Source of the DNA: Macrostomum lignano
Lineage: Eukaryota
Length of the DNA stretch: 64,000 nt
Direction of reading: 5' to 3'
Assembly (NCBI GenBank): GCA_002269645.1
Contig: NIVC01001500.1
Location: forward strand, 186,001-250,000
Shown in pieces: positions 18,361-36,236 of this stretch. Every line of letters starts with the position of its first letter. Position 1 is the first letter of the stretch. Under the pieces are notes generated by a model, which did no database searches, was not told the origin of the DNA, and worked only from the letters and a program-made list of their open reading frames with translations. Both the position numbers and the translations under genes were made by a program.

Positions 18361-20279
18361 GAAATCCACAATAGCAACCGAAATCCACAATAGCAACCGA
18401 AATCCACAATAGCAACCGAAATCCACAATAGCAACCGAAATCCACAATAGCAACCGAAATCCACAATAGCAACCGAAATCCACAATAGCAACCGAAATCC
18501 ACAATAGCAACCGAAATCCACAATAGCAACCGAAATCCACAATAGCAACCGAAATCCACAATAGCAACCGAAATCCACAATAGCAACCGAAATCCACAAT
18601 AGCAACCGAAATCCACAATAGCAACCGAAATCCACAATAGCAACCGAAATCCACAATAGCAACCGAAATCCACAATAGCAACCGAAATCCACAATAGCAA
18701 CCGAAATCCACAATAGCAACCGAAATCCACAATAGCAACCGAAATCCACAATAGCAACCGAAATCCACAATAGCAACCGAAATCCACAATAGCAACCGAA
18801 ATCCACAATAGCAACCGAAATCCACAATAGCAACCGAAATCCACAATAGCAACCGAAATCCACAATAGCAACCGAAATCCACAATAGCAACCGAAATCCA
18901 CAATAGCAACCGAAATCCACAATAGCAACCGAAATCCACAATAGCAACCGAAATCCACAATAGCAACCGAAATCCACAATAGCAACCGAAATCCACAATA
19001 GCAACCGAAATCCACAATAGCAACCGAAATCCACAATAGCAACCGAAATCCACAATAGCAACCGAAATCCATAACAGCAACCGGAATCCATAACAGCAAC
19101 CGGAATCCATAACAGCAACCGGAATCCATAACAGCAACCGGAATCCATAACACCAACCAAAATCCATAACACCAACCAAAATCCATAACAGCAACCGGAA
19201 TCCATAACACCAACCAAAATCCATAACACCAACCAAAATCCATAACAGAAACCGGAAGCCATATTAGTAATCGGAATCCATAACAAAAACCGGAATCCAT
19301 AACACCAACCAAAATCCATAACAGCAACCGGAATCCATAACAGAAACCGGAATCCATAATAGAAACCGGAATCCATAACAGAAACCGGAATCCATAACAG
19401 AAACCGGAATCCATAACAGAAACCGGAATCCATAACAGAACCCGGAATCCATAACAGAAACCGGAATCCATAACAGAACCCGGAATCCATAACAGAAACC
19501 GGAAGCCATATTAGTAATCGGAATCCATAACAGCAACCGGAATCCACAATAGCAACCGGAATCCATAACAGAACCCGGAATCCATAACAGAACCCGGAAT
19601 CCATAACAGAAACCGGAATCCATAACAGAACCCGGAATCCATAACAGAAACCGGAAGCCATATTAGTAATCGGAATCCATAACAAAAACCGGAATCCATA
19701 ACAGAAACCGGAATCCATAATAGAAACCGGAATCCATAACAGAAACCGGAATCCATAACAGAAACCGGAATCCATAACAGAACCCGGAATCCATAACAGA
19801 AACCGGAATCCATAACAGAACCCGGAATCCATAACACCAACCAAAATCCATAACAGAAACCGGAAGCCATATTAGTAATCGGAATCCATAACAAAAACCG
19901 GAATCCATAACAGAAACCGGAATCCACAATAGCAACCAAAATCCATAACAAAAACCAAAATCCATAACAGAACCCGGAATCCATAACAGAAACCGGAAGC
20001 CATATTAGTAATCGGAATCCATAACAAAAACCGGAATCCATAACAGAAACCGGAATCCACAATAGAAACCGGAATCCACAATAGCAACCGAAATCCATAA
20101 CAAAAACCAAAATCCATAACAGAACCCGGAATCCATAACAGAAACCGGAATCCATAACAGCAACCGGAATCCATAACAGCAACCGGAATCCACAATAGCA
20201 ACCGGAATCCACAATAGCAACCGGAATCCATAACAGCAACCGGAATCCATAACAGCAACCGGAATCCACAATAGCAACC
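18361..20279 (+). repeat. 19-bp tandem array, left arm, 101 units (37 identical distal units, then variant units)
   Basis: GAAATCCACAATAGCAACC x37 (18361-19063), then GGAATCCATAACAGAAACC-type variants; 1919 bp = 101x19. Confidence 0.97.
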
Positions 20280-20323
20280 GGAAACCATACTACCTCTAAA
20301 ACTTTAAATTTTTTTCCATAAAA

Positions 20324-20983
20324 ATGGACAGAGATAATTTTGGCGGTAACCACTGCGATAAACACACTTTAAAAATGTTAAAAAGAGCAATAAAAAAAAT
20401 AAAGGCCACCATCGAAGGATCGATAGACTGCAATCGCATTTTGCCACAACTACCACAATCTCTAAAAGAGTTAAGTACATTATTAAAAAACAATACAGAG
20501 ATGCAGAAGCAAATTCCAGATGGTTTAGAAGACTGGATGGAGGGCTTAGATATTGCAATATTAAATAACAGCATATATCTGTTAACAGAATTATGGTCTA
20601 CAACTAACCAATATGTTATTAAAATTAGAGAAAAAGAAAAGAAAGAAAAAGTCCAAACGGAAGCAGAAAGACAAAAAAGAATTTATAAAGAATCTTTAAG
20701 TTTATATAAAGCGGGAATTATTACAACCATACAATATGGTACTAAGCTCCAACAGATTAAACAAATGGTTAATTATTTACTTACTTTTACAAACGATCGC
20801 CCCGAAGGGTCGCGGCCTTCGCCCGATAGGACAAACGCTGCGAACTTACGGTACGACCCGAAGGAGATAAGAAATAAAGTTAAAGAAGATCTTATATTTC
20901 TACATAATAATATTAAATTACTAAAAGAAATAGTAGAAGATATTAACAGCCTTCTACCAACACCGGAGGAAACAGATATCTAA
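20324..20983 (+). CDS. Element ORF-A, 219 aa, unknown function; paralog of the N-terminus of ORF-B
   Basis: Intronless ORF with AAAAATGGA start context; identical mirror copy at 30339-30998. Confidence 0.8.
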   Translation: MDRDNFGGNHCDKHTLKMLKRAIKKIKATIEGSIDCNRILPQLPQSLKELSTLLKNNTEMQKQIPDGLEDWMEGLDIAILNNSIYLLTELWSTTNQYVIKIREKEKKEKVQTEAERQKRIYKESLSLYKAGIITTIQYGTKLQQIKQMVNYLLTFTNDRPEGSRPSPDRTNAANLRYDPKEIRNKVKEDLIFLHNNIKLLKEIVEDINSLLPTPEETDI

Positions 20984-21017
20984 AAATAAGAAATTGTTAA
21001 TTTTTTTATCTATAAAA

Positions 21018-23951
21018 ATGGACACAAATAATTTTAGCGAAAACCAATTCGACAAAATCTTACTACATTCCATAAAAAAAGAAATAATAAATATTAATAG
21101 GTTAATAGATATCTCTATATCGCATTACACCATAGAGCCACAAATAGAAAAAAATATATATAATTTAAATGTTTTAATCGATAAACAGCTAAAGGATATT
21201 AATAATATTAATATATTAGATGGGATAAACACGTGGTTATGTTCCATATCGATGGCAACCATAACAAGAGATATTACTCTTCTAAAGGAAATGCTAGAAA
21301 TAGGTACTAATTATCTTACAAAGATTAGCAAACTTATTCCAGACGATTCCAACGAGGAACTAGAGGAACTAATAATAGATATAGAAGATAGCATGGAGGA
21401 AACAGAGGAAATAGAAGATCGCTCCGACGAAGACTCCGACGAAGACTCCGACGAAGAAATAGAGCAACCAACAGAACCAACACAGCAACCAACAGAACCA
21501 ACACAGCAACCAATAGAACCAACACAGCAACCAATAGAACCAACACGCCCACTAGAGAAAAACCAAATCGACCCCAAAGCTTTTGGACTTAGATCTGGAA
21601 CCGATAAAACCCTGCTCGAGAGAATAGGGCACAAATTACTAATCGAAAACCTAAAGCAAAATAACCTTTTATCCGACGTCGGTAAAATCGACTACACATA
21701 TAAAGAACCAAAACTAAAAGACCAAGTAGCATTAACCGATATATTTTGCGATAATATAATGCTTATTAAAATAACATCTGCACGATCGATAAGAAACTAC
21801 AAAGAAGGAGATGTAATTCCAACCAGATTTTTAATTACCGAACAACTAACTGGAGCCTACAATTCGATTATTCGAGACGCCTTTCGCGATTTTGTAACAC
21901 AACCACATTCTGTAAAGGCAAAACAAGCACTAAATTTACATACCAACACCCACGAGGATTCGATTAACCAGCAGACGATTGCAGGAATTAGAAAGGTTAT
22001 CGCAAAAGACATGGACAGAATTAATGCAAACTTTGGAAAGGATTATGTTGGAGTTACCTACAAGGTAGAATTAGCAGACATACAATTAAAAGAACTTTTA
22101 AATAAATTACCACAATTATTAGAACATCTTAAGCAAGACTATTACTATTTGTTGGACTTCGATATAACACAAGATTTAAATGGTATTTTTAATAAATACG
22201 AGGCGATGGACACACTTAGTGCCATCTTTTCTAACGAGTACAAAATAGTTTCTAACGATAGAACTGTTGGAAGGGACTGCCTTACTTGGTTATACTCTAA
22301 TTGTCGGATAAAGATATATAATAAATTTGTCTGCCAACTAACATCCGGAGGAGTAACAAAGACTCTTGGTAATAACATTTATAATTTTATTAACTGTCCA
22401 GATAAACGATTAAAAGAAACATTCTTAAATCCACTTGCTAAGGAGCATGGTTTTACACGGTTGGAAGCAACAATTTATAATTATAACTACTTTGGTAATA
22501 ACAGACTCTTTAATCCATTATTAGATGCAACGGATGTTATATTGCAACAAAAGGAACATTTACAATATCTACAATTTTATTCCGTATCCTTTACTAAAAT
22601 GTGGAGTAAAATTTCTAACGAGATAGTTAATTCTTGCATAGTTAAATCTCCAGACTTTTTACAAATAGCTTATTATGGCAATTCCTTAACGAGTAAGATA
22701 ATTGGTACACAGATAAAGCTTGTGGATAAAACAGAAGAGCATAAAGAGAGTTTTTTAAATTATGCAATCGCAGCATGTAGTTATAACCAGCTCCCCATTA
22801 ATGTCCTCCTATTGGAACAAGACCCAAAAAATAAAGCCATCGTTAATTGCACACATAAAACATTTTTAAAGCAAGGAAAAACATTTTTTACACAGAGCAC
22901 ATCGCTTTATGCAAAAATTCCAAAAGATGTTAATATAGAAGAGCTGGGATTAATTAGCACAGAAAATATAAAACCAGAAGTGTTAAGAGTTAGAAAGAAT
23001 GCCACAGCACCCCCAATTTACAAATTTACAGAGATTAATAATATAACAACCCCATTCTTAAAACCACTTGCAAAGATTGCAGAAGAATTAGAAGCTGTAG
23101 AACAAGAGCACCAGAAAACTATTACTATTGCAAAACAAAGAAAAGTAATACAAACATATATAGAAAAAAACAAGAAAGAAGTCGACCATGCTAAATACAT
23201 TAAGGATTTATGCGCAGCATTTAAATTAGAACCAGACAATTTTAAAGAAAACACAAAATACGAGATAATTGCTGCACACTTTAACCTCGACATAAAATAT
23301 CCAATTGTGTTATTAATGGCTAAAATGGCGGATGGGGAATTAAAACCATTTTATCTTAAAGGTATTAATAAACAAAAATTTATTAACTTCTATAAAAATA
23401 AAATATTAGATAAGGAAACAACGTTTGGACATTTTACATACACTAATAAATATAAGCGAAATGTTGCTATAGTCTATATCCTAAACACAACAATTCTAAA
23501 CATAACAACAGGTAAACAAATCTCTTACAAAGGAAACACGTTTACAGCAATCGATGGGTTTAAAACCAATTACAACGATCTTAACGAAGAAATTATTAAA
23601 AAAGAAGATATACAAGGTGCACGCGCGGTAAGAAATATTTTAGAAATGGAGGACAAAAGTATACTAAACAATATAAAAGTAGCACATTGTAAACATATAG
23701 AGGAACTAGAAGATGGATTCGAGGACAACGTTACAACCATTATGGTTACGATACATAGAAATAAAACACGATATATTTTTAAACTAGCAACAAAAGAAGA
23801 CCCATTTGTATCCAACGAGTTTATGGAAGAAGAGATAAGAAAGCAAAGATTAAATCTCGATTATAAATTCCATTTAACAGTCGCTAATTATAAAATAACC
23901 AAAAATCGAAAAAAGGAAAGAAGTGTTTATTTAGTAAGTCTTTTGCAATAA
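21018..23951 (+). CDS. Element ORF-B, 977 aa from the first ATG; putative Rep_trans/gpII-like rolling-circle initiator, with acidic and PTEPTQQ-repeat linker
   Basis: Long intronless ORF with motifs DFDITQD (22155), RIKIYNK (Tyr codon 22317) and TRLEA (22458). The family call is by motif resemblance only. Confidence 0.8.
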   Translation: MDTNNFSENQFDKILLHSIKKEIININRLIDISISHYTIEPQIEKNIYNLNVLIDKQLKDINNINILDGINTWLCSISMATITRDITLLKEMLEIGTNYLTKISKLIPDDSNEELEELIIDIEDSMEETEEIEDRSDEDSDEDSDEEIEQPTEPTQQPTEPTQQPIEPTQQPIEPTRPLEKNQIDPKAFGLRSGTDKTLLERIGHKLLIENLKQNNLLSDVGKIDYTYKEPKLKDQVALTDIFCDNIMLIKITSARSIRNYKEGDVIPTRFLITEQLTGAYNSIIRDAFRDFVTQPHSVKAKQALNLHTNTHEDSINQQTIAGIRKVIAKDMDRINANFGKDYVGVTYKVELADIQLKELLNKLPQLLEHLKQDYYYLLDFDITQDLNGIFNKYEAMDTLSAIFSNEYKIVSNDRTVGRDCLTWLYSNCRIKIYNKFVCQLTSGGVTKTLGNNIYNFINCPDKRLKETFLNPLAKEHGFTRLEATIYNYNYFGNNRLFNPLLDATDVILQQKEHLQYLQFYSVSFTKMWSKISNEIVNSCIVKSPDFLQIAYYGNSLTSKIIGTQIKLVDKTEEHKESFLNYAIAACSYNQLPINVLLLEQDPKNKAIVNCTHKTFLKQGKTFFTQSTSLYAKIPKDVNIEELGLISTENIKPEVLRVRKNATAPPIYKFTEINNITTPFLKPLAKIAEELEAVEQEHQKTITIAKQRKVIQTYIEKNKKEVDHAKYIKDLCAAFKLEPDNFKENTKYEIIAAHFNLDIKYPIVLLMAKMADGELKPFYLKGINKQKFINFYKNKILDKETTFGHFTYTNKYKRNVAIVYILNTTILNITTGKQISYKGNTFTAIDGFKTNYNDLNEEIIKKEDIQGARAVRNILEMEDKSILNNIKVAHCKHIEELEDGFEDNVTTIMVTIHRNKTRYIFKLATKEDPFVSNEFMEEEIRKQRLNLDYKFHLTVANYKITKNRKKERSVYLVSLLQ

Positions 23952-24441
23952 ATATATTTTTATTTTTTTACAAATGCGAATACCAAATACGAAATGCAAA
24001 TACAGAATGCGAAATGCGAATACCAAACATCCAAATAAAAAATAAAAACATGTTTATACACAAATTAAATTAAATTATTTAAGTTTTGTTTTACAACTTC
24101 TATATCTTTTAAACAACAACTTCTTAAACTATCTAAATTAATAATTTCCACATTTTTAATTCGAGGACAACGTTACAACCATTGTGGTAACGATATATTT
24201 TTAAACTAGCAACAAAAGAAGACCCATTTGTATCCAACGAGTTTATGGAAGAAGAGATAAGAAACCAAAGATTAAATCTCGATTATAAATTCCGTTTAAC
24301 AGTCGCTAATTATAAAATAACCAAGAATCGAAAAAAGGAAAGAAGTGTTTATTTAGTAAGTCTTTAGCAATAAATATATTTTTATTTTTTTACAAACACA
24401 AATACAAATACAAAATACGAAATATCCAAATAAAAACATGT

Positions 24442-24843
24442 TTATACACAAATTAAATTATTTAAGTTTTGTTTTACAACATCTTTATCTTTTAAACAAC
24501 AACTTCTTAAACTATCTAAATTAATAATTTCCACATTTTTAACCACGGATGTAGCTTTGCGAGCATCGAACTCGTCCTGCATATACATTGGCATGCTAAT
24601 TGTTGGAAGGGCAAGTAGGTTTCTTATATAATTATTAATTAAATAAATAGCATAGGGGTAACAAGGATATCCATGCTTTTTAGACATCCGCGTATACACA
24701 TTTATATCTTGGAGAGAGTCCATTTTAAAAAGAATTTTATCCTCTACATTTAATTCTTCTTTAGTTACATAAAATATTACATCCTTGGTAGATGGACAGG
24801 AGTTCGCATCCAAAATAACTTTATGGATTAATCCTCGATCCAT
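24442..24843 (-). CDS. Element ORF-D, 133 aa, unknown function; paralog of ORF-C
   Basis: AAAAATGGA start; mirror copy at 26480-26881. Confidence 0.75.
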   Translation of the reverse strand: MDRGLIHKVILDANSCPSTKDVIFYVTKEELNVEDKILFKMDSLQDINVYTRMSKKHGYPCYPYAIYLINNYIRNLLALPTISMPMYMQDEFDARKATSVVKNVEIINLDSLRSCCLKDKDVVKQNLNNLICV

Positions 24844-24904
24844 TTTTTACAATATATTTTTTATTATAAAATTTGTTTATTTTGCAACACACCAAGCTTG
24901 TCTT

Positions 24905-25247
24905 TTACACCAACAGATCCATAACTTTATTTTTTTTATTAATTAGTGGTGTAACCTTAAATGTTTCTTCCACACTAATTATATCCACACTGCTAATAGT
25001 CGACATAACTTTCCCATCTTCGAACTCCTCCACACCCAACAACGCTGGAGGCATCGGTATGTGTGGGAGACCAACTAATTTTCTAACATATATCTTAACA
25101 AGCCAAACACCATAAGGATAGCAACCATCGCACTTTATTTTTGGTTTTTTAAGATATATTCTTATATCCTCCACGTTATCTTTTAAGTAGAATCTTTTTA
25201 AAGAAAGCTTTTCTTTAGTTACATAAAAGCAGTCTTTTTTAGTATTA
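24905..25247 (-). pseudogene. 5'-truncated left-arm copy of ORF-C
   Basis: Identity with 26020-26418 stops at 25247; the ATG and upstream motif are absent. Confidence 0.7.
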
Positions 25248-25280
25248 CTCCTAATATAACCTAAAATACTAAAAATATTA

Positions 25281-25620
25281 AATAAAACCAATTATAGTTA
25301 AATAATACCAATTATAGTTAAATAATACCAATTATAGTTAAGTGCGTTCCGCGCTCGCGTGTTTTTATCTCTTTTAACTGTCTTGTATGCCCTGTGTTGT
25401 GCGCCCATGGGCGCTGCGCGCCCACGGTGGTATTCTTTTTTATATTTTATATTTTATATTTTATATTTTATATTTTATATTTTATATTTTATATTTTATA
25501 TTTTAATTTTATATTTTATATTTTATATTTTATATTTTATATTTTATATATTTTATATATTTTATATATTTTATATATTTTATATTTTTTATATTTTATA
25601 TATTTTATATATTTTATGTG
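25281..25620. promoter_or_regulatory. Origin-like module: 3x20-bp direct repeats (25281-25340), GC palindrome GCGCCCATGGGCGC (25401-25414), pure A/T tract (~25436-25617)
   Basis: The motifs are read directly; the origin function is inferred. Confidence 0.5.
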
Positions 25621-25651
25621 TTGTATTTGGTGGAGAAAAAAAGTAAACCTT

Positions 25652-25990
25652 TTAATCGTCGATATCTCGCAAAACAACAACCCTTTCTTTCTTTTTAGAC
25701 TCGTTGGACTTTAACTCGAACGCATACAAAATAAATCTGTAGTTGTAATTTATTTTTTCGATTTGTTTCTCGAAATAATTGTTAGAAATATAAAGCTCTT
25801 TTGTGTTTTCTATCTGGAAAATATAGCGCATGCGGTTCCTAAACTTCTTTCTCCCTTGTGCAACAACAAAATATACTCCTGGTGGAAGGGATTCTAATCT
25901 TTTGCAGTTTTGTGTTATTAACTTACATTGGAGTTGTTTTAATATCCAATCTTGGGGGACATCTTTATCGAACTCGTGGATGGTATCCAT
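25652..25990 (-). CDS. Element ORF-E, 112 aa from the AAAAATGGA start (139 aa from the upstream ATG); single copy; homologous to the ORF-B C-terminus
   Basis: CKRLESL..G..RNRMRYIF..SN..KKERV versus ORF-B CKHIEEL..G..RNKTRYIF..SN..KKERSV. Confidence 0.75.
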   Translation of the reverse strand: MDTIHEFDKDVPQDWILKQLQCKLITQNCKRLESLPPGVYFVVAQGRKKFRNRMRYIFQIENTKELYISNNYFEKQIEKINYNYRFILYAFELKSNESKKKERVVVLRDIDD

Positions 25991-26019
25991 TTTTTTATTA
26001 TTAAAATATATTATGTAAA

Positions 26020-26418
26020 ATGGAAGATAATGTTGTGCATGTAGTAACTTTACATCCTTTGGTAGCTCCAAATATTAATACTAAAAAAGACTGCTTTTAT
26101 GTAACTAAAGAAAAGCTTTCTTTAAAAAGATTCTACTTAAAAGATAACGTGGAGGATATAAGAATATATCTTAAAAAACCAAAAATAAAGTGCGATGGTT
26201 GCTATCCTTATGGTGTTTGGCTTGTTAAGATATATGTTAGAAAATTAGTTGGTCTCCCACACATACCGATGCCTCCAGCGTTGTTGGGTGTGGAGGAGTT
26301 CGAAGATGGGAAAGTTATGTCGACTATTAGCAGTGTGGATATAATTAGTGTGGAAGAAACATTTAAGGTTACACCACTAATTAATAAAAAAAATAAAGTT
26401 ATGGATCTGTTGGTGTAA
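26020..26418 (+). CDS. Element ORF-C, 132 aa, complete copy; unknown function
   Basis: AAAATGGA start; the upstream motif is shared with ORF-D. Confidence 0.75.
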   Translation: MEDNVVHVVTLHPLVAPNINTKKDCFYVTKEKLSLKRFYLKDNVEDIRIYLKKPKIKCDGCYPYGVWLVKIYVRKLVGLPHIPMPPALLGVEEFEDGKVMSTISSVDIISVEETFKVTPLINKKNKVMDLLV

Positions 26419-26479
26419 AAGACAAGCTTGGTGTGTTGCAAAATAAACAAATTTTATAATAAAAAATATATTGTAAAAA

Positions 26480-26881
26480 ATGGATCGAGGATTAATCCAT
26501 AAAGTTATTTTGGATGCGAACTCCTGTCCATCTACCAAGGATGTAATATTTTATGTAACTAAAGAAGAATTAAATGTAGAGGATAAAATTCTTTTTAAAA
26601 TGGACTCTCTCCAAGATATAAATGTGTATACGCGGATGTCTAAAAAGCATGGATATCCTTGTTACCCCTATGCTATTTATTTAATTAATAATTATATAAG
26701 AAACCTACTTGCCCTTCCAACAATTAGCATGCCAATGTATATGCAGGACGAGTTCGATGCTCGCAAAGCTACATCCGTGGTTAAAAATGTGGAAATTATT
26801 AATTTAGATAGTTTAAGAAGTTGTTGTTTAAAAGATAAAGATGTTGTAAAACAAAACTTAAATAATTTAATTTGTGTATAA
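26480..26881 (+). CDS. Element ORF-D, right-arm copy, 133 aa
   Basis: Mirror of 24442-24843. Confidence 0.75.
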   Translation: MDRGLIHKVILDANSCPSTKDVIFYVTKEELNVEDKILFKMDSLQDINVYTRMSKKHGYPCYPYAIYLINNYIRNLLALPTISMPMYMQDEFDARKATSVVKNVEIINLDSLRSCCLKDKDVVKQNLNNLICV

Positions 26882-27371
26882 ACATGTTTTTATTTGGATA
26901 TTTCGTATTTTGTATTTGTATTTGTGTTTGTAAAAAAATAAAAATATATTTATTGCTAAAGACTTACTAAATAAACACTTCTTTCCTTTTTTCGATTCTT
27001 GGTTATTTTATAATTAGCGACTGTTAAACGGAATTTATAATCGAGATTTAATCTTTGGTTTCTTATCTCTTCTTCCATAAACTCGTTGGATACAAATGGG
27101 TCTTCTTTTGTTGCTAGTTTAAAAATATATCGTTACCACAATGGTTGTAACGTTGTCCTCGAATTAAAAATGTGGAAATTATTAATTTAGATAGTTTAAG
27201 AAGTTGTTGTTTAAAAGATATAGAAGTTGTAAAACAAAACTTAAATAATTTAATTTAATTTGTGTATAAACATGTTTTTATTTTTTATTTGGATGTTTGG
27301 TATTCGCATTTCGCATTCTGTATTTGCATTTCGTATTTGGTATTCGCATTTGTAAAAAAATAAAAATATAT

Positions 27372-30304
27372 TTATTGCAAAAGACTTACTAAATAAACAC
27401 TTCTTTCCTTTTTTCGATTTTTGGTTATTTTATAATTAGCGACTGTTAAATGGAATTTATAATCGAGATTTAATCTTTGCTTTCTTATCTCTTCTTCCAT
27501 AAACTCGTTGGATACAAATGGGTCTTCTTTTGTTGCTAGTTTAAAAATATATCGTGTTTTATTTCTATGTATCGTAACCATAATGGTTGTAACGTTGTCC
27601 TCGAATCCATCTTCTAGTTCCTCTATATGTTTACAATGTGCTACTTTTATATTGTTTAGTATACTTTTGTCCTCCATTTCTAAAATATTTCTTACCGCGC
27701 GTGCACCTTGTATATCTTCTTTTTTAATAATTTCTTCGTTAAGATCGTTGTAATTGGTTTTAAACCCATCGATTGCTGTAAACGTGTTTCCTTTGTAAGA
27801 GATTTGTTTACCTGTTGTTATGTTTAGAATTGTTGTGTTTAGGATATAGACTATAGCAACATTTCGCTTATATTTATTAGTGTATGTAAAATGTCCAAAC
27901 GTTGTTTCCTTATCTAATATTTTATTTTTATAGAAGTTAATAAATTTTTGTTTATTAATACCTTTAAGATAAAATGGTTTTAATTCCCCATCCGCCATTT
28001 TAGCCATTAATAACACAATTGGATATTTTATGTCGAGGTTAAAGTGTGCAGCAATTATCTCGTATTTTGTGTTTTCTTTAAAATTGTCTGGTTCTAATTT
28101 AAATGCTGCGCATAAATCCTTAATGTATTTAGCATGGTCGACTTCTTTCTTGTTTTTTTCTATATATGTTTGTATTACTTTTCTTTGTTTTGCAATAGTA
28201 ATAGTTTTCTGGTGCTCTTGTTCTACAGCTTCTAATTCTTCTGCAATCTTTGCAAGTGGTTTTAAGAATGGGGTTGTTATATTATTAATCTCTGTAAATT
28301 TGTAAATTGGGGGTGCTGTGGCATTCTTTCTAACTCTTAACACTTCTGGTTTTATATTTTCTGTGCTAATTAATCCCAGCTCTTCTATATTAACATCTTT
28401 TGGAATTTTTGCATAAAGCGATGTGCTCTGTGTAAAAAATGTTTTTCCTTGCTTTAAAAATGTTTTATGTGTGCAATTAACGATGGCTTTATTTTTTGGG
28501 TCTTGTTCCAATAGGAGGACATTAATGGGGAGCTGGTTATAACTACATGCTGCGATTGCATAATTTAAAAAACTCTCTTTATGCTCTTCTGTTTTATCCA
28601 CAAGCTTTATCTGTGTACCAATTATCTTACTCGTTAAGGAATTGCCATAATAAGCTATTTGTAAAAAGTCTGGAGATTTAACTATGCAAGAATTAACTAT
28701 CTCGTTAGAAATTTTACTCCACATTTTAGTAAAGGATACGGAATAAAATTGTAGATATTGTAAATGTTCCTTTTGTTGCAATATAACATCCGTCGCATCT
28801 AATAATGGATTAAAGAGTCTGTTATTACCAAAGTAGTTATAATTATAAATTGTTGCTTCCAACCGTGTAAAACCATGCTCCTTAGCAAGTGGATTTAAGA
28901 ATGTTTCTTTTAATCGTTTATCTGGACAGTTAATAAAATTATAAATGTTATTACCAAGAGTCTTTGTTACTCCTCCGGATGTTAGTTGGCAGACAAATTT
29001 ATTATATATCTTTATCCGACAATTAGAGTATAACCAAGTAAGGCAGTCCCTTCCAACAGTTCTATCGTTAGAAACTATTTTGTACTCGTTAGAAAAGATG
29101 GCACTAAGTGTGTCCATCGCCTCGTATTTATTAAAAATACCATTTAAATCTTGTGTTATATCGAAGTCCAACAAATAGTAATAGTCTTGCTTAAGATGTT
29201 CTAATAATTGTGGTAATTTATTTAAAAGTTCTTTTAATTGTATGTCTGCTAATTCTACCTTGTAGGTAACTCCAACATAATCCTTTCCAAAGTTTGCATT
29301 AATTCTGTCCATGTCTTTTGCGATAACCTTTCTAATTCCTGCAATCGTCTGCTGGTTAATCGAATCCTCGTGGTGTTGGTATGTAAATTTAGTGCTTGTT
29401 TTGCCTTTACAGAATGTGGTTGTGTTACAAAATCGCGAAAGGCGTCTCGAATAATCGAATTGTAGGCTCCAGTTAGTTGTTCGGTAATTAAAAATCTGGT
29501 TGGAATTACATCTCCTTCTTTGTAGTTTCTTATCGATCGTGCAGATGTTATTTTAATAAGCATTATATTATCGCAAAATATATCGGTTAATGCTACTTGG
29601 TCTTTTAGTTTTGGTTCTTTATATGTGTAGTCGATTTTACCGACGTCGGATAAAAGGTTATTTTGCTTTAGGTTTTCGATTAGTAATTTGTGCCCTATTC
29701 TCTCGAGCAGGGTTTTATCGGTTCCAGATCTAAGTCCAAAAGCTTTGGGGTCGATTTGGTTTTTCTCTAGTGGGCGTGTTGGTTCTATTGGTTGCTGTGT
29801 TGGTTCTATTGGTTGCTGTGTTGGTTCTGTTGGTTGCTGTGTTGGTTCTGTTGGTTGCTCTATTTCTTCGTCGGAGTCTTCGTCGGAGTCTTCGTCGGAG
29901 CGATCTTCTATTTCCTCTGTTTCCTCCATGCTATCTTCTATATCTATTATTAGTTCCTCTAGTTCCTCGTTGGAATCGTCTGGAATAAGTTTGCTAATCT
30001 TTGTAAGATAATTAGTACCTATTTCTAGCATTTCCTTTAGAAGAGTAATATCTCTTGTTATGGTTGCCATCGATATGGAACATAACCACGTGTTTATCCC
30101 ATCTAATATATTAATATTATTAATATCCTTTAGCTGTTTATCGATTAAAACATTTAAATTATATATATTTTTTTCTATTTGTGGCTCTATGGTGTAATGC
30201 GATATAGAGATATCTATTAACCTATTAATATTTATTATTTCTTTTTTTATGGAATGTAGTAAGATTTTGTCGAATTGGTTTTCGCTAAAATTATTTGTGT
30301 CCAT
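27372..30304 (-). pseudogene. Right-arm copy of ORF-B, split by a 1-bp deletion at ~29372
   Basis: Left ACCAACACCCACGAGG versus right ACCAACACCACGAGG; gives 357-aa and 646-aa ORFs. Could be a homopolymer sequencing error. Confidence 0.75.
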
Positions 30305-30338
30305 TTTTATAGATAAAAAAATTAACAATTTCTTATTT

Positions 30339-30998
30339 TTAGATATCTGTTTCCTCCGGTGTTGGTAGAAGGCTGTTAATATCTTCTACTATTTCTTTTA
30401 GTAATTTAATATTATTATGTAGAAATATAAGATCTTCTTTAACTTTATTTCTTATCTCCTTCGGGTCGTACCGTAAGTTCGCAGCGTTTGTCCTATCGGG
30501 CGAAGGCCGCGACCCTTCGGGGCGATCGTTTGTAAAAGTAAGTAAATAATTAACCATTTGTTTAATCTGTTGGAGCTTAGTACCATATTGTATGGTTGTA
30601 ATAATTCCCGCTTTATATAAACTTAAAGATTCTTTATAAATTCTTTTTTGTCTTTCTGCTTCCGTTTGGACTTTTTCTTTCTTTTCTTTTTCTCTAATTT
30701 TAATAACATATTGGTTAGTTGTAGACCATAATTCTGTTAACAGATATATGCTGTTATTTAATATTGCAATATCTAAGCCCTCCATCCAGTCTTCTAAACC
30801 ATCTGGAATTTGCTTCTGCATCTCTGTATTGTTTTTTAATAATGTACTTAACTCTTTTAGAGATTGTGGTAGTTGTGGCAAAATGCGATTGCAGTCTATC
30901 GATCCTTCGATGGTGGCCTTTATTTTTTTTATTGCTCTTTTTAACATTTTTAAAGTGTGTTTATCGCAGTGGTTACCGCCAAAATTATCTCTGTCCAT
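30339..30998 (-). CDS. Element ORF-A, right-arm copy, 219 aa
   Basis: Same translation as 20324-20983. Confidence 0.8.
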   Translation of the reverse strand: MDRDNFGGNHCDKHTLKMLKRAIKKIKATIEGSIDCNRILPQLPQSLKELSTLLKNNTEMQKQIPDGLEDWMEGLDIAILNNSIYLLTELWSTTNQYVIKIREKEKKEKVQTEAERQKRIYKESLSLYKAGIITTIQYGTKLQQIKQMVNYLLTFTNDRPEGSRPSPDRTNAANLRYDPKEIRNKVKEDLIFLHNNIKLLKEIVEDINSLLPTPEETDI

Positions 30999-31042
30999 TT
31001 TTATGGAAAAAAATTTAAAGTTTTAGAGGTAGTATGGTTTCC

Positions 31043-32847
31043 GGTTGCTATTGTGGATTCCGGTTGCTGTTATGGATTCCGGTTGCTGTTATGGATTCCG
31101 GTTGCTATTGTGGATTCCGGTTGCTATTGTGGATTCCGGTTGCTGTTATGGATTCCGGTTGCTGTTATGGATTCCGGTTTCTGTTATGGATTCCGGGTTC
31201 TGTTATGGATTTTGGTTTTTGTTATGGATTTCGGTTGCTATTGTGGATTCTGGTTTCTATTGTGGATTCCGGTTTCTGTTATGGATTCCGGTTTTTGTTA
31301 TGGATTCCGATTACTAATATGGCTTCCGGTTTCTGTTATGGATTCCGGGTTCTGTTATGGATTTTGGTTTTTGTTATGGATTTTGGTTGCTATTGTGGAT
31401 TCCGGTTTCTGTTATGGATTCCGGTTTTTGTTATGGATTCCGATTACTAATATGGCTTCCGGTTTCTGTTATGGATTTTGGTTGGTGTTATGGATTCCGG
31501 GTTCTGTTATGGATTCCGGTTTCTGTTATGGATTCCGGGTTCTGTTATGGATTCCGGTTTCTGTTATGGATTCCGGTTTCTGTTGTGGATTCCGGTTTCT
31601 GTTATGGATTCCGGTTTCTATTATGGATTCCGGTTTCTGTTATGGATTCCGGTTTTTGTTATGGATTCCGATTACTAATATGGCTTCCGGTTTCTGTTAT
31701 GGATTCCGGGTTCTGTTATGGATTCCGGTTTCTGTTATGGATTCCGGGTTCTGTTATGGATTCCGGGTTCTGTTATGGATTCCGGTTGCTATTGTGGATT
31801 CCGGTTGCTGTTATGGATTCCGATTACTAATATGGCTTCCGGTTTCTGTTATGGATTCCGGGTTCTGTTATGGATTCCGGTTTCTGTTATGGATTCCGGG
31901 TTCTGTTATGGATTCCGGTTTCTGTTATGGATTCCGGTTTCTGTTATGGATTCCGGTTTCTGTTATGGATTCCGGTTTCTATTATGGATTCCGGTTTCTG
32001 TTATGGATTCCGGTTGCTGTTATGGATTTTGGTTGGTGTTATGGATTCCGGTTTTTGTTATGGATTCCGATTACTAATATGGCTTCCGGTTTCTGTTATG
32101 GATTTTGGTTGGTGTTATGGATTTTGGTTGGTGTTATGGATTCCGGTTGCTGTTATGGATTTTGGTTGGTGTTATGGATTTTGGTTGGTGTTATGGATTC
32201 CGGTTGCTGTTATGGATTCCGGTTGCTGTTATGGATTCCGGTTGCTGTTATGGATTCCGGTTGCTGTTATGGATTTCGGTTGCTATTGTGGATTTCGGTT
32301 GCTATTGTGGATTTCGGTTGCTATTGTGGATTTCGGTTGCTATTGTGGATTTCGGTTGCTATTGTGGATTTCGGTTGCTATTGTGGATTTCGGTTGCTAT
32401 TGTGGATTTCGGTTGCTATTGTGGATTTCGGTTGCTATTGTGGATTTCGGTTGCTATTGTGGATTTCGGTTGCTATTGTGGATTTCGGTTGCTATTGTGG
32501 ATTTCGGTTGCTATTGTGGATTTCGGTTGCTATTGTGGATTTCGGTTGCTATTGTGGATTTCGGTTGCTATTGTGGATTTCGGTTGCTATTGTGGATTTC
32601 GGTTGCTATTGTGGATTTCGGTTGCTATTGTGGATTTCGGTTGCTATTGTGGATTTCGGTTGCTATTGTGGATTTCGGTTGCTATTGTGGATTTCGGTTG
32701 CTATTGTGGATTTCGGTTGCTATTGTGGATTTCGGTTGCTATTGTGGATTTCGGTTGCTATTGTGGATTTCGGTTGCTATTGTGGATTTCGGTTGCTATT
32801 GTGGATTTCGGTTGCTATTGTGGATTTCGGTTGCTATTGTGGATTTC
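31043..32847 (-). repeat. 19-bp tandem array, right arm, 95 units (30 identical distal units)
   Basis: 1805 bp = 95x19; homogeneous block 32278-32847. Confidence 0.97.
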
Positions 32848-33717
32848 GGTACGATCGAGCCGAAGGTTCGCGTGCCTATGGTGCGATTCTGTGGACGTTA
32901 GTTTGGAGCTTATGTGGAATTAATTATGGATTTATGTGTTATTTTTGTGGATTAAAAATTTTTGGATTTAGATATTGTTTTTTATGGAGGCTTTTTTAAT
33001 TTTCTTTTGCGATTTGTATGTTTTTATAACGATTTTAGCTGTTTTAAGACATTTTTGCTTTCGATATGGCAAATTTTGCTGTTTTTAAAATCGGTTTTTT
33101 TAAGCCTAAATTTTGCGATTTTTTGGTGTTTTTAGCGATTTTTAAGCCATTTTTGCTAATTTTAAGCTGTTTTTTAAACACCCAATTTCGCCGAAACTGA
33201 AAAGGGTGGGGGGTGTTAAGTGCATTATTTGATTAGATGTATTAATGGTGTTTAGATGTGTTTTTTTATTTACCCCCCGTGTCCCCCCTCTAGACCCTCA
33301 AAACGGTCATTAAAAAAGTGCTCTGGGTCCAGAAGCGTCTTTTTCTATACTACTTAAGTAGGTTGATATATTACATTCAAAATATAAACAAAAATGCTGT
33401 TCGTAGTAATACAAAATAAAACAAAAACACAGGATCGATGGGGAGAATGAGGAAAAGCAAACGGGAATACAAGACAATTGACGAACTTACCTAAAATGGC
33501 TGAAGCGCCTCGTCATCTAATTGAAAAAAAAACTCGCCACTCAGCATGCATAATGAAATGAAAATCAGCGAGATTGTTAAAAACAACTAAAATAATTAGC
33601 CGCTCAATCAGTCTGATCGGCGTTTTGTTTTTTTGTCGTCATTTTCCGAATTGCTCTCGACGACTTCGTTGACGGGACCAGCCTGGGCGGGGTCATTAGG
33701 AAATGGGATTGTGTTCA

Positions 33718-34530: not shown

Positions 34531-36236
34531 TGGAATCGGCGCTAAAACTGTCACAGACTGTTGAATTCGGCGCTAAAACTGTCACAGACTGTTGAATTCG
34601 GCGCTAAAACTGTCACAGACTGTTGAATTCGGCGCTAAAACTGTCACAGACTGTTGAATTCGGCGCTAAAACTGTCACAGACTGTTGAATTCGGCGCTAA
34701 AACTATAAGAGACTGTTGGATTCGGCGCTAAAACTATTAGAGACTGTTGGATTCGGCGCTAAAACTATCAGAGACTGTTGGATTCGGCGCTAAAACTATT
34801 AGAGACTGTTAGAATCGGCGATAAGACAGCCACACACTGTTGGAATCGGCGCTAAAACTATCAAACTTTTGGAATCGGTGCTAAAACTATCAGACTGTTG
34901 GATTCGGTGCTAAAACTGTCAGAGACTGTTAGAATCGGCGCTAAAACTATCAGACTGTTGGATTCGGTGCTAAAACTGTCAGAGACTGTTAAAAATCGGC
35001 GCTAAAACTATCAGAGACTGTTGGATTCGGCGCTAAAACTATCAGACTGTTGGATTCGGTGCTAAAACTATCAGACTGTTGGATTCGGCGCTAAAACTGT
35101 CAGAGACTGTTAGAATCGGCGCTAAAACTATCAGACTGTTGGATTCGGTGCTAAAACTGTCAGAGACTGTTAGAATCGGCGCTAAAACTATCAGAGACTG
35201 TTGGATTCGGCGCTAAAACTATCAGACTGTTGGATTCGGTGCTAAAACTGTCAGAGACTGTTAGAATCGGCGCTAAAACTATCAGACTGTTGGATTCGGT
35301 GCTAAAACTGTCAGAGACTGTTAGAATCGGCGCTAAAACTATCAGAGACTGTTGGATTCGGCGCTAAAACTATCAGACTGTTGGATTCGGTGCTAAAACT
35401 ATCAGACTGTTGGATTCGGTGCTAAAACTGTCAGAGACTGTTAGAATCGGCGCTAAAACTATCAGAGACTGTTGGATTCGGCGCTAAAACTATTAGACTG
35501 TTGGATTCGGTGCTAAAACTATCAGACTGTTGGATTCGGCGCTAAAACTATCAGACTGTTGGATTCGGTGCTAAAACTATCAGACTGTTGGATTCGGCGC
35601 TAAAACTATCAGACTGTTGGAATCGGTGCTAAAACTGTCAGACTGTTGGATTCGGTGCTAAAACTATCAGACTGTTGGATTCGGCGCTAAAACTATCAGA
35701 CTGTTGGAATCGGTGCTAAAACTATCAGACTGTTGGAATCGGCGCTAAAACTATCAGACTGTTGGATTCGGTGCTAAAACTGTCAGAGACTGTTAGAATC
35801 GGCGCTAAAACTATCAGAGACTGTTGGATTCGGCGCTAAAACTATCAGACTGTTGGATTCGGTGCTAAAACTATCAGACTGTTGGATTCGGTGCTAAAAC
35901 TATCAGACTGTTGGAATCGGTGCTAAACTGTCAGAGACTGTTAGAATCGGCGCTAAAACTATCAGAGACTGTTGGATTCGGCGCTAAAACTATTAGAGAC
36001 TGTTAGAATCGGCGCTAAAACTATCAGAGACTGTTAGAATCGGCGCTAAAACTATTAGAGACTGTTAGAATCGGCGCTAAAACTGTTAGAGACTGTTAGA
36101 ATCGGCGCTAAAACTGACAGGCCGTTGGATTCGGCGCTAAAACTATCAGACTGTTGGAATTGGCGCTAAAACAGCCACACACTGTTGGAATCGGCGCTAA
36201 AACAGCCAGACTGTTGGAATCGGCGCTAAAACTGTT
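34531..36236. repeat. 29/31-bp minisatellite
   Basis: GGATTCGGCGCTAAAACTATCA(GA)GACTGTT variants. Confidence 0.97.

What the first reader, a model, noticed from the sequence alone, without database searches (positions are those of the whole stretch)
25248..25650. Single-copy centre looks like a replication origin
Seen in order: three 20-bp direct repeats AATAA(A/T)ACCAATTATAGTTA (25281-25340), a GC island with GCGCTCGCG and the perfect palindrome GCGCCCATGGGCGC (25401-25414), and ~180 bp of pure A/T built from TTTTATA(TA) units. Knowledge: iterons, a GC hairpin and an AT-rich unwinding element are the usual origin parts, and Rep_trans proteins nick in a GC-rich hairpin. Inference: this is the origin or hairpin-resolution site and sits near the symmetry axis.
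Basis: partly seen in the sequence, partly recalled or inferred. Interest (0 to 1): 0.7.

Follow-up and report, generated by a model that had tools for sequence, protein, structure and literature searches.

The report
Non-coding centre of a palindromic element
The three repeats, the GC-rich palindrome and the long A/T run are real and lie in the small unique middle of a 15.5-kb mirror-image, virus-like DNA element inserted in an animal chromosome. They could mark where that element starts copying itself, but relatives built on the same mirror-image plan lack them, so this is unproven.

Summary
The setting needs correcting. The finding (25248-25650) is only the non-coding left half of an 828-bp single-copy centre (25248-26075). 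That centre also holds a small gene and the true 5' end of another.

The centre sits between two 7.4-kb inverted arms of a 15,505-bp AT-rich element (17852-33356) inserted in an animal chromosome. The element's 985-aa protein belongs to a large unnamed family: 925 clusters, no Pfam, NCBIfam or PDB sequence match. Its core is Rep_trans-like by weak fold match and partial motif match. Its C-terminal half is OB-fold-like.

Relatives are small linear elements with terminal inverted repeats, fold-back ends and one physical DNA end. One lineage, 28% identical in the large protein, has the same plan of long arms around a short single-copy centre.

An origin in the finding is plausible (about 0.35) but only circumstantial:
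- The relative's centre is 89% coding and lacks repeats, palindrome and A/T run.
- No sequence is shared with any relative.
- The hairpins are not unusually stable.
- The host is rich in tandem repeats.
- The centre has no mirror symmetry, so a hairpin-resolution site of the classical kind is not supported.

The parts
17852..33356 (.). Whole element, 15,505 bp: AT-rich, palindromic, inserted in host DNA
   Evidence: Inverted repeats. Both ends read TAAGTAGTATAG... inward. GC 0.27-0.42 against host 0.39-0.45, and CpG o/e 1.1-1.3 against 0.70. Host exons lie on both sides.
17852..25247 (.). Left arm
   Evidence: The 4,958-bp gene part differs from the right arm by 1 substitution and 1 one-base indel.
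26076..33356 (.). Right arm (inverted copy of the left arm)
25248..26075 (.). Single-copy centre, 828 bp; symmetry axis at 25661.5; no internal inverted symmetry
25281..25340 (+). Three tandem 20-bp direct repeats (candidate protein-binding repeats or a young minisatellite)
25341..25433 (.). GC island (57% GC). Holds GCGCTCGCG (25351-25359), the perfect 14-bp palindrome (25401-25414) and an overlapping hairpin (arms 25405-25414 / 25418-25427).
25436..25617 (.). 182-bp A/T-only tract of TTTTATA / TTTTATATA units
25652..26071 (-). Centre gene. The ORF is 139 aa; the probable start is the ATG at 25990, giving 112 aa. It is a paralogue of the last C-terminal domain of the 985-aa protein.
   Evidence: 34% identity over 82 aa, E 1e-9; start-site motif.
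26020..26418 (+). 132-aa gene, complete copy. Its first 56 bases lie in the centre.
   Evidence: Its N-terminus aligns with the paralogue ORF133.
24905..25247 (-). Left-arm copy of the 132-aa gene, which lacks the 5' end because the arm ends here
20994..23951 (+). 985-aa protein gene, intact copy (ATG at 21018). Rep_trans-like core at residues about 206-640; OB-fold-like C-terminal half.
27372..30328 (-). Right-arm copy of the 985-aa gene. Broken by one frameshift (a one-base indel), plus one substitution relative to the left copy.
20324..20983 (+). 219-aa gene (mirror copy 30339-30998, minus strand)
   Evidence: No family match.
24442..24843 (-). 133-aa gene, paralogue of the 132-aa gene (mirror copy 26480-26881, plus strand)
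18358..20289 (.). 19-bp tandem array, about 102 copies (mirror array 31033-32850, about 96 copies)
17852..18357 (.). Outer terminal non-coding region with G-runs and a 9-bp inverted repeat TCTAGACCC / GGGTCTAGA (mirror 32851-33356)
23952..24441 (.). Second non-coding stretch of each arm (mirror 26882-27371). Holds 13/20-bp repeats and a partial second copy of the 3' end of the 985-aa gene.

Best explanation
Shown:
- The finding is the non-coding left half (25248-25651) of the 828-bp single-copy centre of a 15.5-kb linear-type palindromic element that sits in an animal chromosome.
- The rest of the centre is a small gene, paralogous to the last C-terminal domain (residues about 899-980) of the element's large protein, whose C-terminal half matches OB-fold DNA-binding proteins, plus the true 5' end of a second gene.
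- The long-arms-plus-short-centre plan recurs in a lineage whose large protein is only 28% identical. I read it as the native form of these elements rather than an accident of this locus.

Inferred, and my most likely single reading (about 0.35): the stretch is a cis-acting replication region of the element.
- The large protein has a Rep_trans-like nicking core with an invariant tyrosine on a beta-strand and an acidic cluster, plus OB-fold single-strand-binding domains.
- This protein would bind the three 20-bp repeats.
- The adjoining 182-bp A/T run would open.
- One strand would be cut in or beside the GC palindromes (25401-25427).
- Synthesis would run outward into an arm.
- Because the arms are inverted copies, a displaced strand can snap back on itself, which would also keep the arms identical.

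No step of this mechanism has been shown.
For: - The features are real and adjacent in the order repeats, GC palindromes, A/T run.
- The palindrome is the only perfect palindrome of 14 bp or more in the element and is rare in shuffles of the island (45/20,000).
- The stretch is the only single-copy non-coding DNA of the element.
- The arms next to the centre are coding, so any signal near the axis has to be here.
- Large protein, fold evidence: the core model has pLDDT 88. Its best PDB match is the Rep_trans initiator 4cwe_A. An inovirus 'REP' is among the viral matches.
- Large protein, motif evidence: in the 17-sequence alignment, D388/D390/D394, R438/K440/Y442/K444 and R489/E491/T493 are invariant. 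They lie on predicted strands 384-396, 437-443 and 487-495. Y-x-K and x-R-x-E match Rep_trans motifs III and IV as listed in PMC5714925. pT181 RepC reads IYNK where the window protein reads IYNK.
- The C-terminal half matches OB-fold DNA-binding proteins: Teb1, baculovirus LEF-3 and PrgE.
- Family context points to replication through turn-arounds. There are fold-back contig ends, true terminal repeats (L015, 435 nt at 98%) and a D5-type helicase partner in L012.
- Several relatives also have a long non-coding stretch with short tandem repeats and palindromes: L012 2860-3030 and L027 3998-4836.
- L022-L025 share the arms-plus-centre plan.
Against: - The centre of L022-L025 is 89% coding (63 + 4 non-coding bases) and has no repeats, GC palindrome or A/T run.
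- The same holds for the L015 internal centre and the L016/L017 terminal spacers.
- No k-mer is shared with any relative beyond chance.
- No close relative exists in the databases searched. The best is 39% protein identity.
- The 20-bp unit is confined to one tandem triplet and is unrelated to the 19-bp terminal array.
- The hairpins are not unusually stable.
- The host is rich in tandem repeats and has similar A/T microsatellites.
- About 40% of each arm-plus-centre unit is non-coding, including a partial gene duplicate, so non-functional DNA is tolerated.
- Rep_trans membership is unproven. There is no Pfam or NCBIfam match, profile-profile comparison is negative, and fold matches to giant-virus transcription-factor-like and TBP proteins are equally good or better.
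- In known linear replicons with terminal repeats the origins lie at the termini (own knowledge).
Confidence: 0.35

Rival explanations
1. Spacer at a repeat boundary. The stretch is non-essential DNA left at the inner edge of the left arm when the inverted repeat expanded inward. It is a remnant of the former unique region, lying 3' of the centre gene. The 20-bp triplet and the A/T run are slippage products. The element's replication and end-processing signals lie at the outer termini.
For: - The left arm/centre boundary cuts the 132-aa gene, so it is a recombination junction.
- The triad is absent from the equivalent regions of relatives.
- There is no conservation.
- Tandem arrays are common in the host and in the element: about 0.56 and 0.86 per kb (my counts).
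- The 19-bp arrays have changed by 6 units between otherwise near-identical arms.
- The A/T run resembles host microsatellites.
- Relatives have terminal repeats, fold-back ends and a physical end at the outer terminus.
- A partial gene duplicate shows that junk is tolerated.
Against: - The GC island with the element's only long perfect palindrome is not explained by slippage.
- Two arrays in 404 bp is somewhat more than the background density predicts (Poisson P about 0.02 from the density).
- The insertion looks young (near-identical arms, no CpG loss), which leaves little time for decay after insertion.
Confidence: 0.3
2. Transcription-control region. Read on the minus strand, the A/T run is an array of TATAAAA-type units like the A/T-rich sequence in front of every start codon of the element. 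The stretch would then be one of three things: a binding array for the element's TBP-like large protein, a promoter or enhancer region, or simply the termination zone of the centre gene.
For: - All five genes start in a T-A(4-7)-TGGA context. There are 10 hits in the window, all inside the element, against 0.24 expected in the gene part.
- T-run termination-like signals follow most stops, including the centre gene's stop at the right edge of the finding.
- The best viral fold matches of the core are giant-virus early-transcription-factor-large-subunit-like proteins, and TBP is among the PDB matches.
Against: - No intact gene lies downstream of the array on either strand. To the left is only the truncated gene copy.
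- The invariant acidic and tyrosine residues on the sheet suit an enzyme better than a pure DNA binder.
- The OB-fold domains and the helicase partner in a relative point to replication.
Confidence: 0.12
3. Classical hairpin or concatemer resolution site. The centre would be the unfolded form of a hairpin telomere, as in poxvirus concatemer junctions or parvovirus dimer junctions. The finding would hold the site where the junction is cut to give monomers.
For: - Relatives show turn-arounds with single-copy spacers of 39-63 nt at their ends.
- L022-L025 have a 595-nt centre.
- The element has tandem arrays near its ends, like poxvirus terminal repeats (own knowledge).
- The gene start and stop signals look like those of a cytoplasmic virus.
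Against: - The 828-bp centre has no inverted symmetry and no paired sites on both sides of the axis.
- It contains a gene and part of another.
- The features lie 250-380 bp to one side of the axis.
- An 828-nt non-self-complementary loop is unlike known hairpin telomeres.
Confidence: 0.1
4. Artefact. The palindrome is an assembly fold-back or a host rearrangement, and the finding is junction filler with no relation to the element's biology.
For: - The inner 3.3 kb of the arms is 100% identical.
- The single one-base indel could be a sequencing error.
- No second copy is available for comparison.
Against: - Different host DNA flanks the two identical outer ends, and a 7-bp direct repeat lies at the junctions.
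- The arrays differ by 6 units and the outer 510 bp by 4 substitutions.
- Four independent assemblies of a distant relative show the same plan.
- The centre is continuous with the right arm through an intact gene.
Confidence: 0.05

Closest known systems
Rep_trans (PF02486) initiators and their double-strand origins: pT181 RepC, pC221 RepD, pSTK1 Rep
   Same: - The best PDB fold match of the core is 4cwe_A.
- An invariant tyrosine sits in Y-x-K on a beta-strand.
- An x-R-x-E strand and an acidic D-x-D strand occur in the same order as motifs I, III and IV.
- A GC-rich palindrome lies next to direct repeats, like a bind-plus-nick origin.
   Different: - No HMM or profile match.
- Motif I lacks the arginine, motif III lacks the glutamate, and motif II is not recognisable.
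- The protein is three times larger, with OB-fold domains.
- The replicon is linear and palindromic, not a small circle.
- The host is eukaryotic.
- A 182-bp A/T run is not part of pT181-type origins.
Iteron-type plasmid origins (direct repeats next to an A/T-rich unwinding element)
   Same: Three tandem 20-bp repeats within about 100 bp of a long A/T-only tract.
   Different: - The element has no theta-type Rep family protein.
- The repeats are perfectly tandem, like a minisatellite.
- Nothing is conserved in relatives.
Poxvirus-type linear genomes (inverted terminal repeats with tandem arrays, hairpin ends, concatemer junctions)
   Same: - Identical inverted ends, with long tandem arrays just inside them.
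- The repeat/unique boundary cuts a gene.
- A/T-rich start-site motif overlapping the ATG, and T-run signals after genes.
- Fold-back ends in relatives.
- A distant homologue lies on a giant-virus-like contig.
   Different: - Only five gene families and no capsid or polymerase genes.
- The arms make up 95% of the genome.
- The centre is not a symmetric junction.
Parvovirus rolling-hairpin replication (dimer junctions cut by a site-specific nickase)
   Same: - A nickase-like initiator.
- Palindromic duplex forms.
- Turn-arounds.
   Different: - The initiator is not of the HUH type.
- The palindrome is 7.4 kb per arm rather than 0.1-0.4 kb.
- No structural genes.
Palindromic linear replicons that start copying near the centre or at a cross-linked end: Tetrahymena rDNA minichromosome, Paramecium mitochondrial DNA
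   Same: - A giant palindrome with a short non-palindromic centre.
- In Paramecium, an A/T-rich tandem-repeat, non-palindromic loop at the initiating end and head-to-head dimers.
   Different: - Cellular or organellar replicons with no relation in sequence.
- No initiator protein of this kind.
Transpovirons (about 7-kb linear episomes with terminal inverted repeats that ride on giant viruses; PMC7031253, PMC5499653, listed)
   Same: - A small, AT-rich, capsid-less linear element with terminal inverted repeats.
- Giant-virus-like expression signals.
   Different: - Transpovirons are marked by a superfamily-1 helicase fused to an inactivated polymerase (PMC5499653 title and abstract). That protein is absent here.
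- The large protein here has no match to them.

Membership tests
Rep_trans (PF02486) - the 985-aa protein | Match to the family HMM above the gathering score | tested here: not met
   - No Rep_trans hit for the window protein, 16 relatives or distant relatives, even at E up to 5.
- The positive control, pT181 RepC, hits at 5e-11.
- No NCBIfam hit.
Rep_trans (PF02486) - the 985-aa protein | Fold of the RepD/RepDE catalytic domain | tested here: inconclusive
   - 4cwe_A is the top PDB match of the core model, but at E 7e-3, probability 0.38 and TM 0.18/0.26.
- TBP and giant-virus transcription-factor-like proteins match as well or better.
Rep_trans (PF02486) - the 985-aa protein | Motif III: catalytic tyrosine on a beta-strand in Y-x-K-x-x-E (PMC5714925) | tested here: inconclusive
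   - Y442-N-K444 is invariant in 17 sequences and lies on predicted strand 437-443.
- RepC has the same I-Y-N-K.
- The glutamate position is C447/Q448 instead.
Rep_trans (PF02486) - the 985-aa protein | Motif IV: W/L-x-R-x-E | tested here: met
   F-T-R489-L-E491 on strand 487-495, with R and E invariant.
Rep_trans (PF02486) - the 985-aa protein | Motif I (R-x-D) and motif II (T/S-x-Y/E-x-G) | tested here: not met
   - The D388-x-D390 strand is invariant but has no arginine.
- No T/S-x-Y/E-x-G lies between it and Y442.
Rep_trans (PF02486) - the 985-aa protein | Site-specific nicking with a covalent 5'-phosphotyrosine link | not testable with these tools
   This is a biochemical property.
Rolling-circle-type double-strand origin (bind site plus nick site in a hairpin) | Inverted repeat able to extrude a hairpin, next to initiator-binding repeats | tested here: inconclusive
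   The palindromes at 25401-25427 lie 60 bp from the repeats. Folding is not better than shuffles (z -1.2).
Rolling-circle-type double-strand origin (bind site plus nick site in a hairpin) | Conservation of the nick hairpin among related replicons | tested here: not met
   No counterpart exists in L022-L025, L015-L017, L012 or L027, and no k-mers are shared. The caveat is that these relatives are only 25-39% identical in protein.
Iteron-type origin | Several direct repeats next to an A/T-rich unwinding element | tested here: met
   3 x 20 bp at 25281-25340, and a 182-bp A/T-only run at 25436-25617.
Iteron-type origin | Repeats bound by the element's own initiator | not testable with these tools
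   No binding data exist. The unit is unrelated to the 19-bp terminal array and has no other copy.
Hairpin-telomere / concatemer-junction resolution site | Sequence symmetric about the axis, with paired sites in inverted orientation | tested here: not met
   No minus-strand self-matches occur within the centre. Only short local palindromes are present. All features lie on one side of the axis.
Linear replicon with terminal inverted repeats | Identical inverted termini | tested here: met
   - Arms 17852-25247 and 26076-33356.
- L015 has a 435-nt terminal repeat at 98%.
- L012 has at least 127 nt.
Linear replicon with terminal inverted repeats | Physical DNA ends | tested here: inconclusive
   - The window copy is integrated, so it has no free ends.
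- The relative L022 starts with a sequencing-adapter string directly on element DNA.
- L016/L017 fold back at the terminus.

The most novel reading that the evidence does not exclude
These are members of an undescribed, widespread family of eukaryote-associated linear DNA elements. They would replicate as giant hairpins or palindromes using a Rep_trans-type tyrosine nickase fused to OB-fold single-strand-binding domains. In the window element the single-copy centre would be both the turn-around and the start site. This would resemble the cross-linked A/T-rich initiation loop of Paramecium mitochondrial DNA, but driven by a plasmid-type initiator and carried by an element with giant-virus-like expression signals.
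Probability: 0.2. Interest if true: 0.85.

Novelty: new variant of a known kind. Interest (0 to 1): 0.6.

Why it matters
As far as I know, Rep_trans initiators have been described only in bacterial plasmids, phages and conjugative elements. The review read here (PMC5714925) lists only such examples.

A family of 925 clusters (at 50% identity) of large Rep_trans-like proteins with OB-fold domains would therefore extend this initiator class to eukaryote-associated replicons. Members are found in insect genomes, in an unidentified animal, on 5-9-kb linear metagenomic contigs and on a giant-virus-like contig.

It would also add a new genome plan: about 16 kb, of which 95% is inverted repeat.

If the centre is the origin, it gives a concrete and testable place to look for the nick. 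If it is not, the finding still marks the one asymmetric piece of an otherwise symmetric genome, and the element is a clean, apparently young insertion for studying how such DNA enters animal chromosomes.

Tried and rejected
- Pfam, PHROGs and NCBIfam scans of all five proteins, of 17-19 relatives and of distant relatives. There was no significant family. ORF139 has a sub-threshold hit to baculovirus DUF816 at E 0.0033, which I did not rely on.
- PDB sequence searches with the protein and with the profile found nothing.
- Profile-profile comparison with a pT181 RepC alignment was negative. That alignment is too shallow (80-89% identical members) because the homologue search returned only close staphylococcal copies.
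- A scan of viral contigs for relatives found none. An exact scan for the repeat dimer found none.
- Exact look-ups of two window proteins found nothing on record, so the source genome and other copies could not be found.
- Rfam and tRNA scans of the element found nothing.
- Host identification through a sulfatase exon gave at best 48% identity, so the host is unidentified.
- Literature searches for Rep_trans in eukaryotic or giant-virus contexts and for palindromic linear elements found no description of this family. The Paramecium analogy could not be checked in the held library.
- Similarity between the 20-bp repeat and the 19-bp terminal array unit was not significant (p 0.17).
- The 9-mer CAGAGCACT is shared by the window terminus and the L015 terminus (by eye). 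I judged it too weak to use.
- The Schistocerca and 'Baumannia MAG' loci hold solitary gene copies with no element context, so they were no use for the origin question.
- Housekeeping: before the nature of the element was known, a scratch file held the left arm for a self-BLAST. In one search, scratch files held three metagenomic contigs. All scratch files were deleted.
Full report
**1. The observation**

- Three tandem 20-bp units lie at 25281-25340. TRF gives 3.2 copies, 97% matches.
- GCGCTCGCG lies at 25351-25359.
- The perfect 14-bp palindrome lies at 25401-25414.
- A second overlapping hairpin has arms 25405-25414 and 25418-25427.
- A 93-bp island of 57% GC lies in a 26-30% GC element.
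- An uninterrupted A/T-only run of 182 bp spans 25436-25617. It is the longest in the window. TRF reads it as 27 copies of a 7-bp unit.

The statistics are mixed.
- The palindrome is the only perfect palindrome of 14 bp or more in the 15.5-kb element. It arises in 45 of 20,000 shuffles of the island. The window as a whole holds 27 such palindromes against 5.6 expected.
- The hairpins fold no better than shuffled sequence (z -1.2 to -1.7).
- The 20-bp unit has no other copy in the window, even with two mismatches.
- The A/T run is 77-81% identical to host A/T microsatellites at 54.65-54.8 and 59.8-60.0 kb.
- The host flanks carry about 0.56 tandem arrays per kb (my count).

**2. The setting**

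The finding sits in a giant palindrome with arms 17852-25247 and 26076-33356.
- The 4,958-bp gene part of the arms differs by one substitution and one one-base indel.
- The 19-bp tandem arrays (about 102 and 96 copies) differ by six units.
- The outer 510 bp differ by four substitutions.
- Both outer ends read TAAGTAGTATAG... inward and abut different host DNA.
- AGTAGGT lies three bases from the left end and directly at the right end. This may be a 7-bp target duplication or microhomology.
- Host exons (a steryl-sulfatase-like gene and a sulfotransferase-like gene) lie on either side. The host could not be identified; the best match is 48% identical.
- CpG is not depleted in the element (o/e 1.1-1.3) but is depleted in the host (0.70).
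- I conclude that this is a real and probably young insertion of a 15,505-bp element, not an assembly fold-back.

**3. Anatomy of the centre**

The single-copy centre is 25248-26075 (828 bp), twice what the finding covers.
- Its right half holds a small gene on the minus strand. The ORF is 25652-26071, with the probable start at 25990, giving 112 aa. It is a paralogue of the last C-terminal domain of the large protein (34% over 82 aa, E 1e-9).
- The right half also holds the first 56 bases of a 132-aa gene (26020-26418).
- The N-terminus of that gene aligns with its paralogue ORF133. The right copy is therefore the complete gene, and the left-arm copy lacks its 5' end.
- It follows that the left arm/centre boundary is a recombination junction inside a gene.
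- The symmetry axis is at 25661.5.
- The centre has no internal inverted symmetry.

**4. Gene content and expression signals**

Each arm carries a 219-aa gene, a 985-aa gene and a 133-aa gene, plus the 132-aa gene at the centre boundary.
- The left copy of the 985-aa gene is intact. The right copy has one frameshift.
- All five gene families start in a T-A(4-7)-TGGA context. There are 10 hits in 64 kb, all inside the element, eight of them at start codons, against 0.24 expected in the gene part.
- T-runs interrupted by one base follow most stop codons.
- This arrangement resembles the promoter-at-the-ATG and T-run termination style of cytoplasmic large DNA viruses (own knowledge).

**5. The large protein**

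There is no Pfam, PHROGs, NCBIfam or PDB sequence match.

The family is large and unnamed.
- 925 clusters (at 50% identity) score E below 1e-3.
- Named members are only 'uncharacterized' proteins of insects: Schistocerca, Planococcus and Cacopsylla.
- Most others lie on metagenome contigs of 3-9 kb.

Structure prediction gives a confident core (residues 206-640, pLDDT 88, pTM 0.85).
- Its best PDB match is the staphylococcal Rep_trans initiator 4cwe_A, weakly (E 7e-3, probability 0.38), followed by TBP.
- Among viral models the best matches are giant-virus proteins annotated as early-transcription-factor-large-subunit-like (E 1.5e-4). An inovirus 'REP' follows at E 4.8e-3.
- The C-terminal half matches OB-fold DNA-binding proteins: Teb1, baculovirus LEF-3 and PrgE.

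Three neighbouring predicted strands carry invariant residues:
- D388, D390, T392 and D394;
- R438, K440, Y442 and K444;
- R489, E491 and T493.

The review PMC5714925 lists the Rep_trans motifs as I R-x-D, II T/S-x-Y/E-x-G, III Y-x-K-x-x-E (with the tyrosine on a strand) and IV W/L-x-R-x-E.
- The window protein has the Y-x-K. It reads I-Y-N-K, as does pT181 RepC.
- It has the x-R-x-E.
- It has an acidic strand where motif I lies.
- It lacks the motif I arginine, the motif III glutamate and motif II.
- A profile-profile comparison with RepC was negative, but the RepC alignment was too shallow to be a fair test.
- My verdict is that it works like a Rep_trans nickase with moderate likelihood, while family membership is not established.

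**6. Relatives**

- L012 (5.7 kb) has inverted ends of at least 127 nt, a 504-aa homologue and a D5-type helicase (D5_N, E 7e-9). It also has a central non-coding stretch with an inverted array of 9-10-bp repeats.
- L015 (9.5 kb) has true 435-nt terminal repeats at 98% identity.
- L016 and L017 run through the same terminus, across a 39-51-nt single-copy spacer, and back into the inverted terminus. This is the signature of hairpin ends or head-to-head junctions.
- L018 places a distant homologue on a giant-virus-like contig with heliorhodopsin, RING, BTB and PARG genes.

Most telling are L022-L025.
- They are four assemblies from different samples, with a 931-aa homologue that is 28% identical over 620 aa (E 2e-38) and one shared gene order.
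- L022, L023 and L024 end on the right with a 100% inverted repeat that always runs to the contig end. The repeat is 102-140 nt, which is the limit for a k-141 assembler. L025 stops inside the centre gene.
- The repeats flank a 595-nt single-copy segment that carries one 175-aa gene. That segment is found in both orientations.
- L022 begins with a sequencing-adapter string directly on G/C-rich element DNA, which marks a physical end.
- This lineage therefore has about 8.1-kb arms around a 0.6-kb centre, the same plan as the window element. On that basis I take the plan to be native to these elements rather than peculiar to this locus.

**7. Testing the origin reading**

For:
- The stretch is the only single-copy non-coding DNA.
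- The arms next to the axis are coding.
- The order of repeats, GC palindromes and A/T run is what binding, nicking and unwinding parts would look like.
- The protein is plausibly a nickase with single-strand-binding domains.
- The family shows turn-arounds.
- Other relatives have a long non-coding stretch with short repeats and palindromes: L012, and L027 at 3998-4836.

Against:
- The L022-type centre is 89% coding and has none of the three features.
- Neither the L015 internal centre nor the L016/L017 spacers have them.
- No k-mers are shared beyond chance.
- The 20-bp unit is unrelated to the 19-bp terminal array (p 0.17).
- The hairpins are not special thermodynamically.
- About 40% of each arm-plus-centre unit is non-coding, including a partial second copy of the 3' end of the large gene in 23952-24441. 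Dispensable DNA is therefore tolerated.
- The host is prone to tandem repeats.
- The available relatives are too distant (25-39% protein identity) for non-coding conservation to be expected.

**8. Mechanism**

My ranking is:
- cis-acting replication region (bind, open, nick): 0.35;
- spacer at a repeat-expansion junction, with replication signals at the outer termini: 0.30;
- transcription-control or termination region: 0.12;
- classical symmetric hairpin-resolution site: 0.10, disfavoured because the centre has no symmetry and contains genes;
- artefact: 0.05.

Only the anatomy is shown. Every mechanistic step is inferred.

**9. Comparison with known systems, and novelty**

- The closest known initiators are Rep_trans proteins.
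- The closest genome plans are poxvirus-type linear genomes with terminal repeats and arrays, parvovirus rolling-hairpin intermediates, the palindromic rDNA of Tetrahymena and the cross-linked linear mitochondrial DNA of Paramecium. The last two rest on my own knowledge.
- The closest life-style analogue may be the transpovirons, but their signature protein is absent.
- I found no description of this family.
- I rate it a new variant of known kinds. The origin claim itself remains a hypothesis.

**10. Limits**

- No second copy of this element and no close relative could be retrieved.
- No read-level data were available.
- The host is unidentified.

Noticed in passing
window 23952-24441 (mirror 26882-27371): The intergenic stretch between the convergent 985-aa and 133-aa genes holds a second, partial copy of the 3' end of the 985-aa gene, followed by the same downstream sequence. 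It also holds 13/20-bp tandem repeats.
   Followed up: partly
window 18358-20289 and 31033-32850: There are about 100 copies of a 19-bp unit just inside each end. The two arrays differ by 114 bp (six units), although the gene parts of the arms are almost identical. They could be binding or maintenance arrays. This was not tested.
   Followed up: partly
window 17842-17851 and 33357-33363: AGTAGGT flanks the element on both sides. It lies 3 bp from the left end and abuts the right end. The target also resembles the element's own terminal TAAGTAG. This may be a 7-bp target duplication or microhomology-mediated joining.
   Followed up: partly
window 20319, 21013, 24849(-), 25997(-), 26016 and mirror sites: Every gene of the element starts in a T-A(4-7)-TGGA context. 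There are 10 hits in 64 kb, all inside the element. T-runs interrupted by one base follow most stops. This resembles the expression signals of cytoplasmic large DNA viruses.
   Followed up: yes
window 17852-33356 against the flanks: CpG observed/expected is 1.1-1.3 in the element and 0.70 in the host flanks. This suggests a recent insertion or an unmethylated island.
   Followed up: no
L022 1-60: The contig begins with a sequencing-adapter string directly followed by G/C-rich element DNA, so this is a physical DNA end in the sample. AAAACCCC x3 lies about 200 nt inside.
   Followed up: partly
L022 1554-2669: By eye, the 371-aa protein combines an N-terminal domain like the C-terminal domain of the large protein with a cysteine/histidine-rich HNH-like region. 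There is a weak BLAST match to the window's centre gene (E 0.16).
   Followed up: no
L004 3669-5143; L003 1-640: Small genes, or degraded copies, that repeat the C-terminal part of the large protein lie next to the large gene in other lineages too. The window's centre gene fits this habit.
   Followed up: partly
L016 4686-4782; L017 1-217 and 5579-5661: The contig ends fold back through single-copy spacers of 39-63 nt. L015 and L017 share a 99% identical 439-nt terminal region although their large genes are only 75% identical. This points to terminal-repeat exchange between lineages.
   Followed up: partly
L001 (GCA_018224525.1 scaffold filed under Candidatus Baumannia cicadellinicola): The scaffold mixes symbiont genes with an insect-type homologue of the large protein, runs of N and a polymerase-B-like ORF fragment. 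It is probably host or endogenous-element DNA binned with the symbiont.
   Followed up: no
L018 15538-16275 and neighbours: A distant homologue (816 aa) sits on a 23-kb contig with heliorhodopsin, RING, BTB and PARG genes, which is typical of giant viruses.
   Followed up: partly
window 54003-54067 and 58001-58065: The host repeat CGGGCCCGGGCCCG occurs four times, in two pairs 4 kb apart. This suggests a duplicated host element.
   Followed up: no
window 1274-15547 and 34531-38858: The host flanks are unusually rich in long minisatellites with 19-43-bp units and tens of copies, and in (TCTG)n arrays. This matters as background for judging any tandem repeat in the window.
   Followed up: partly
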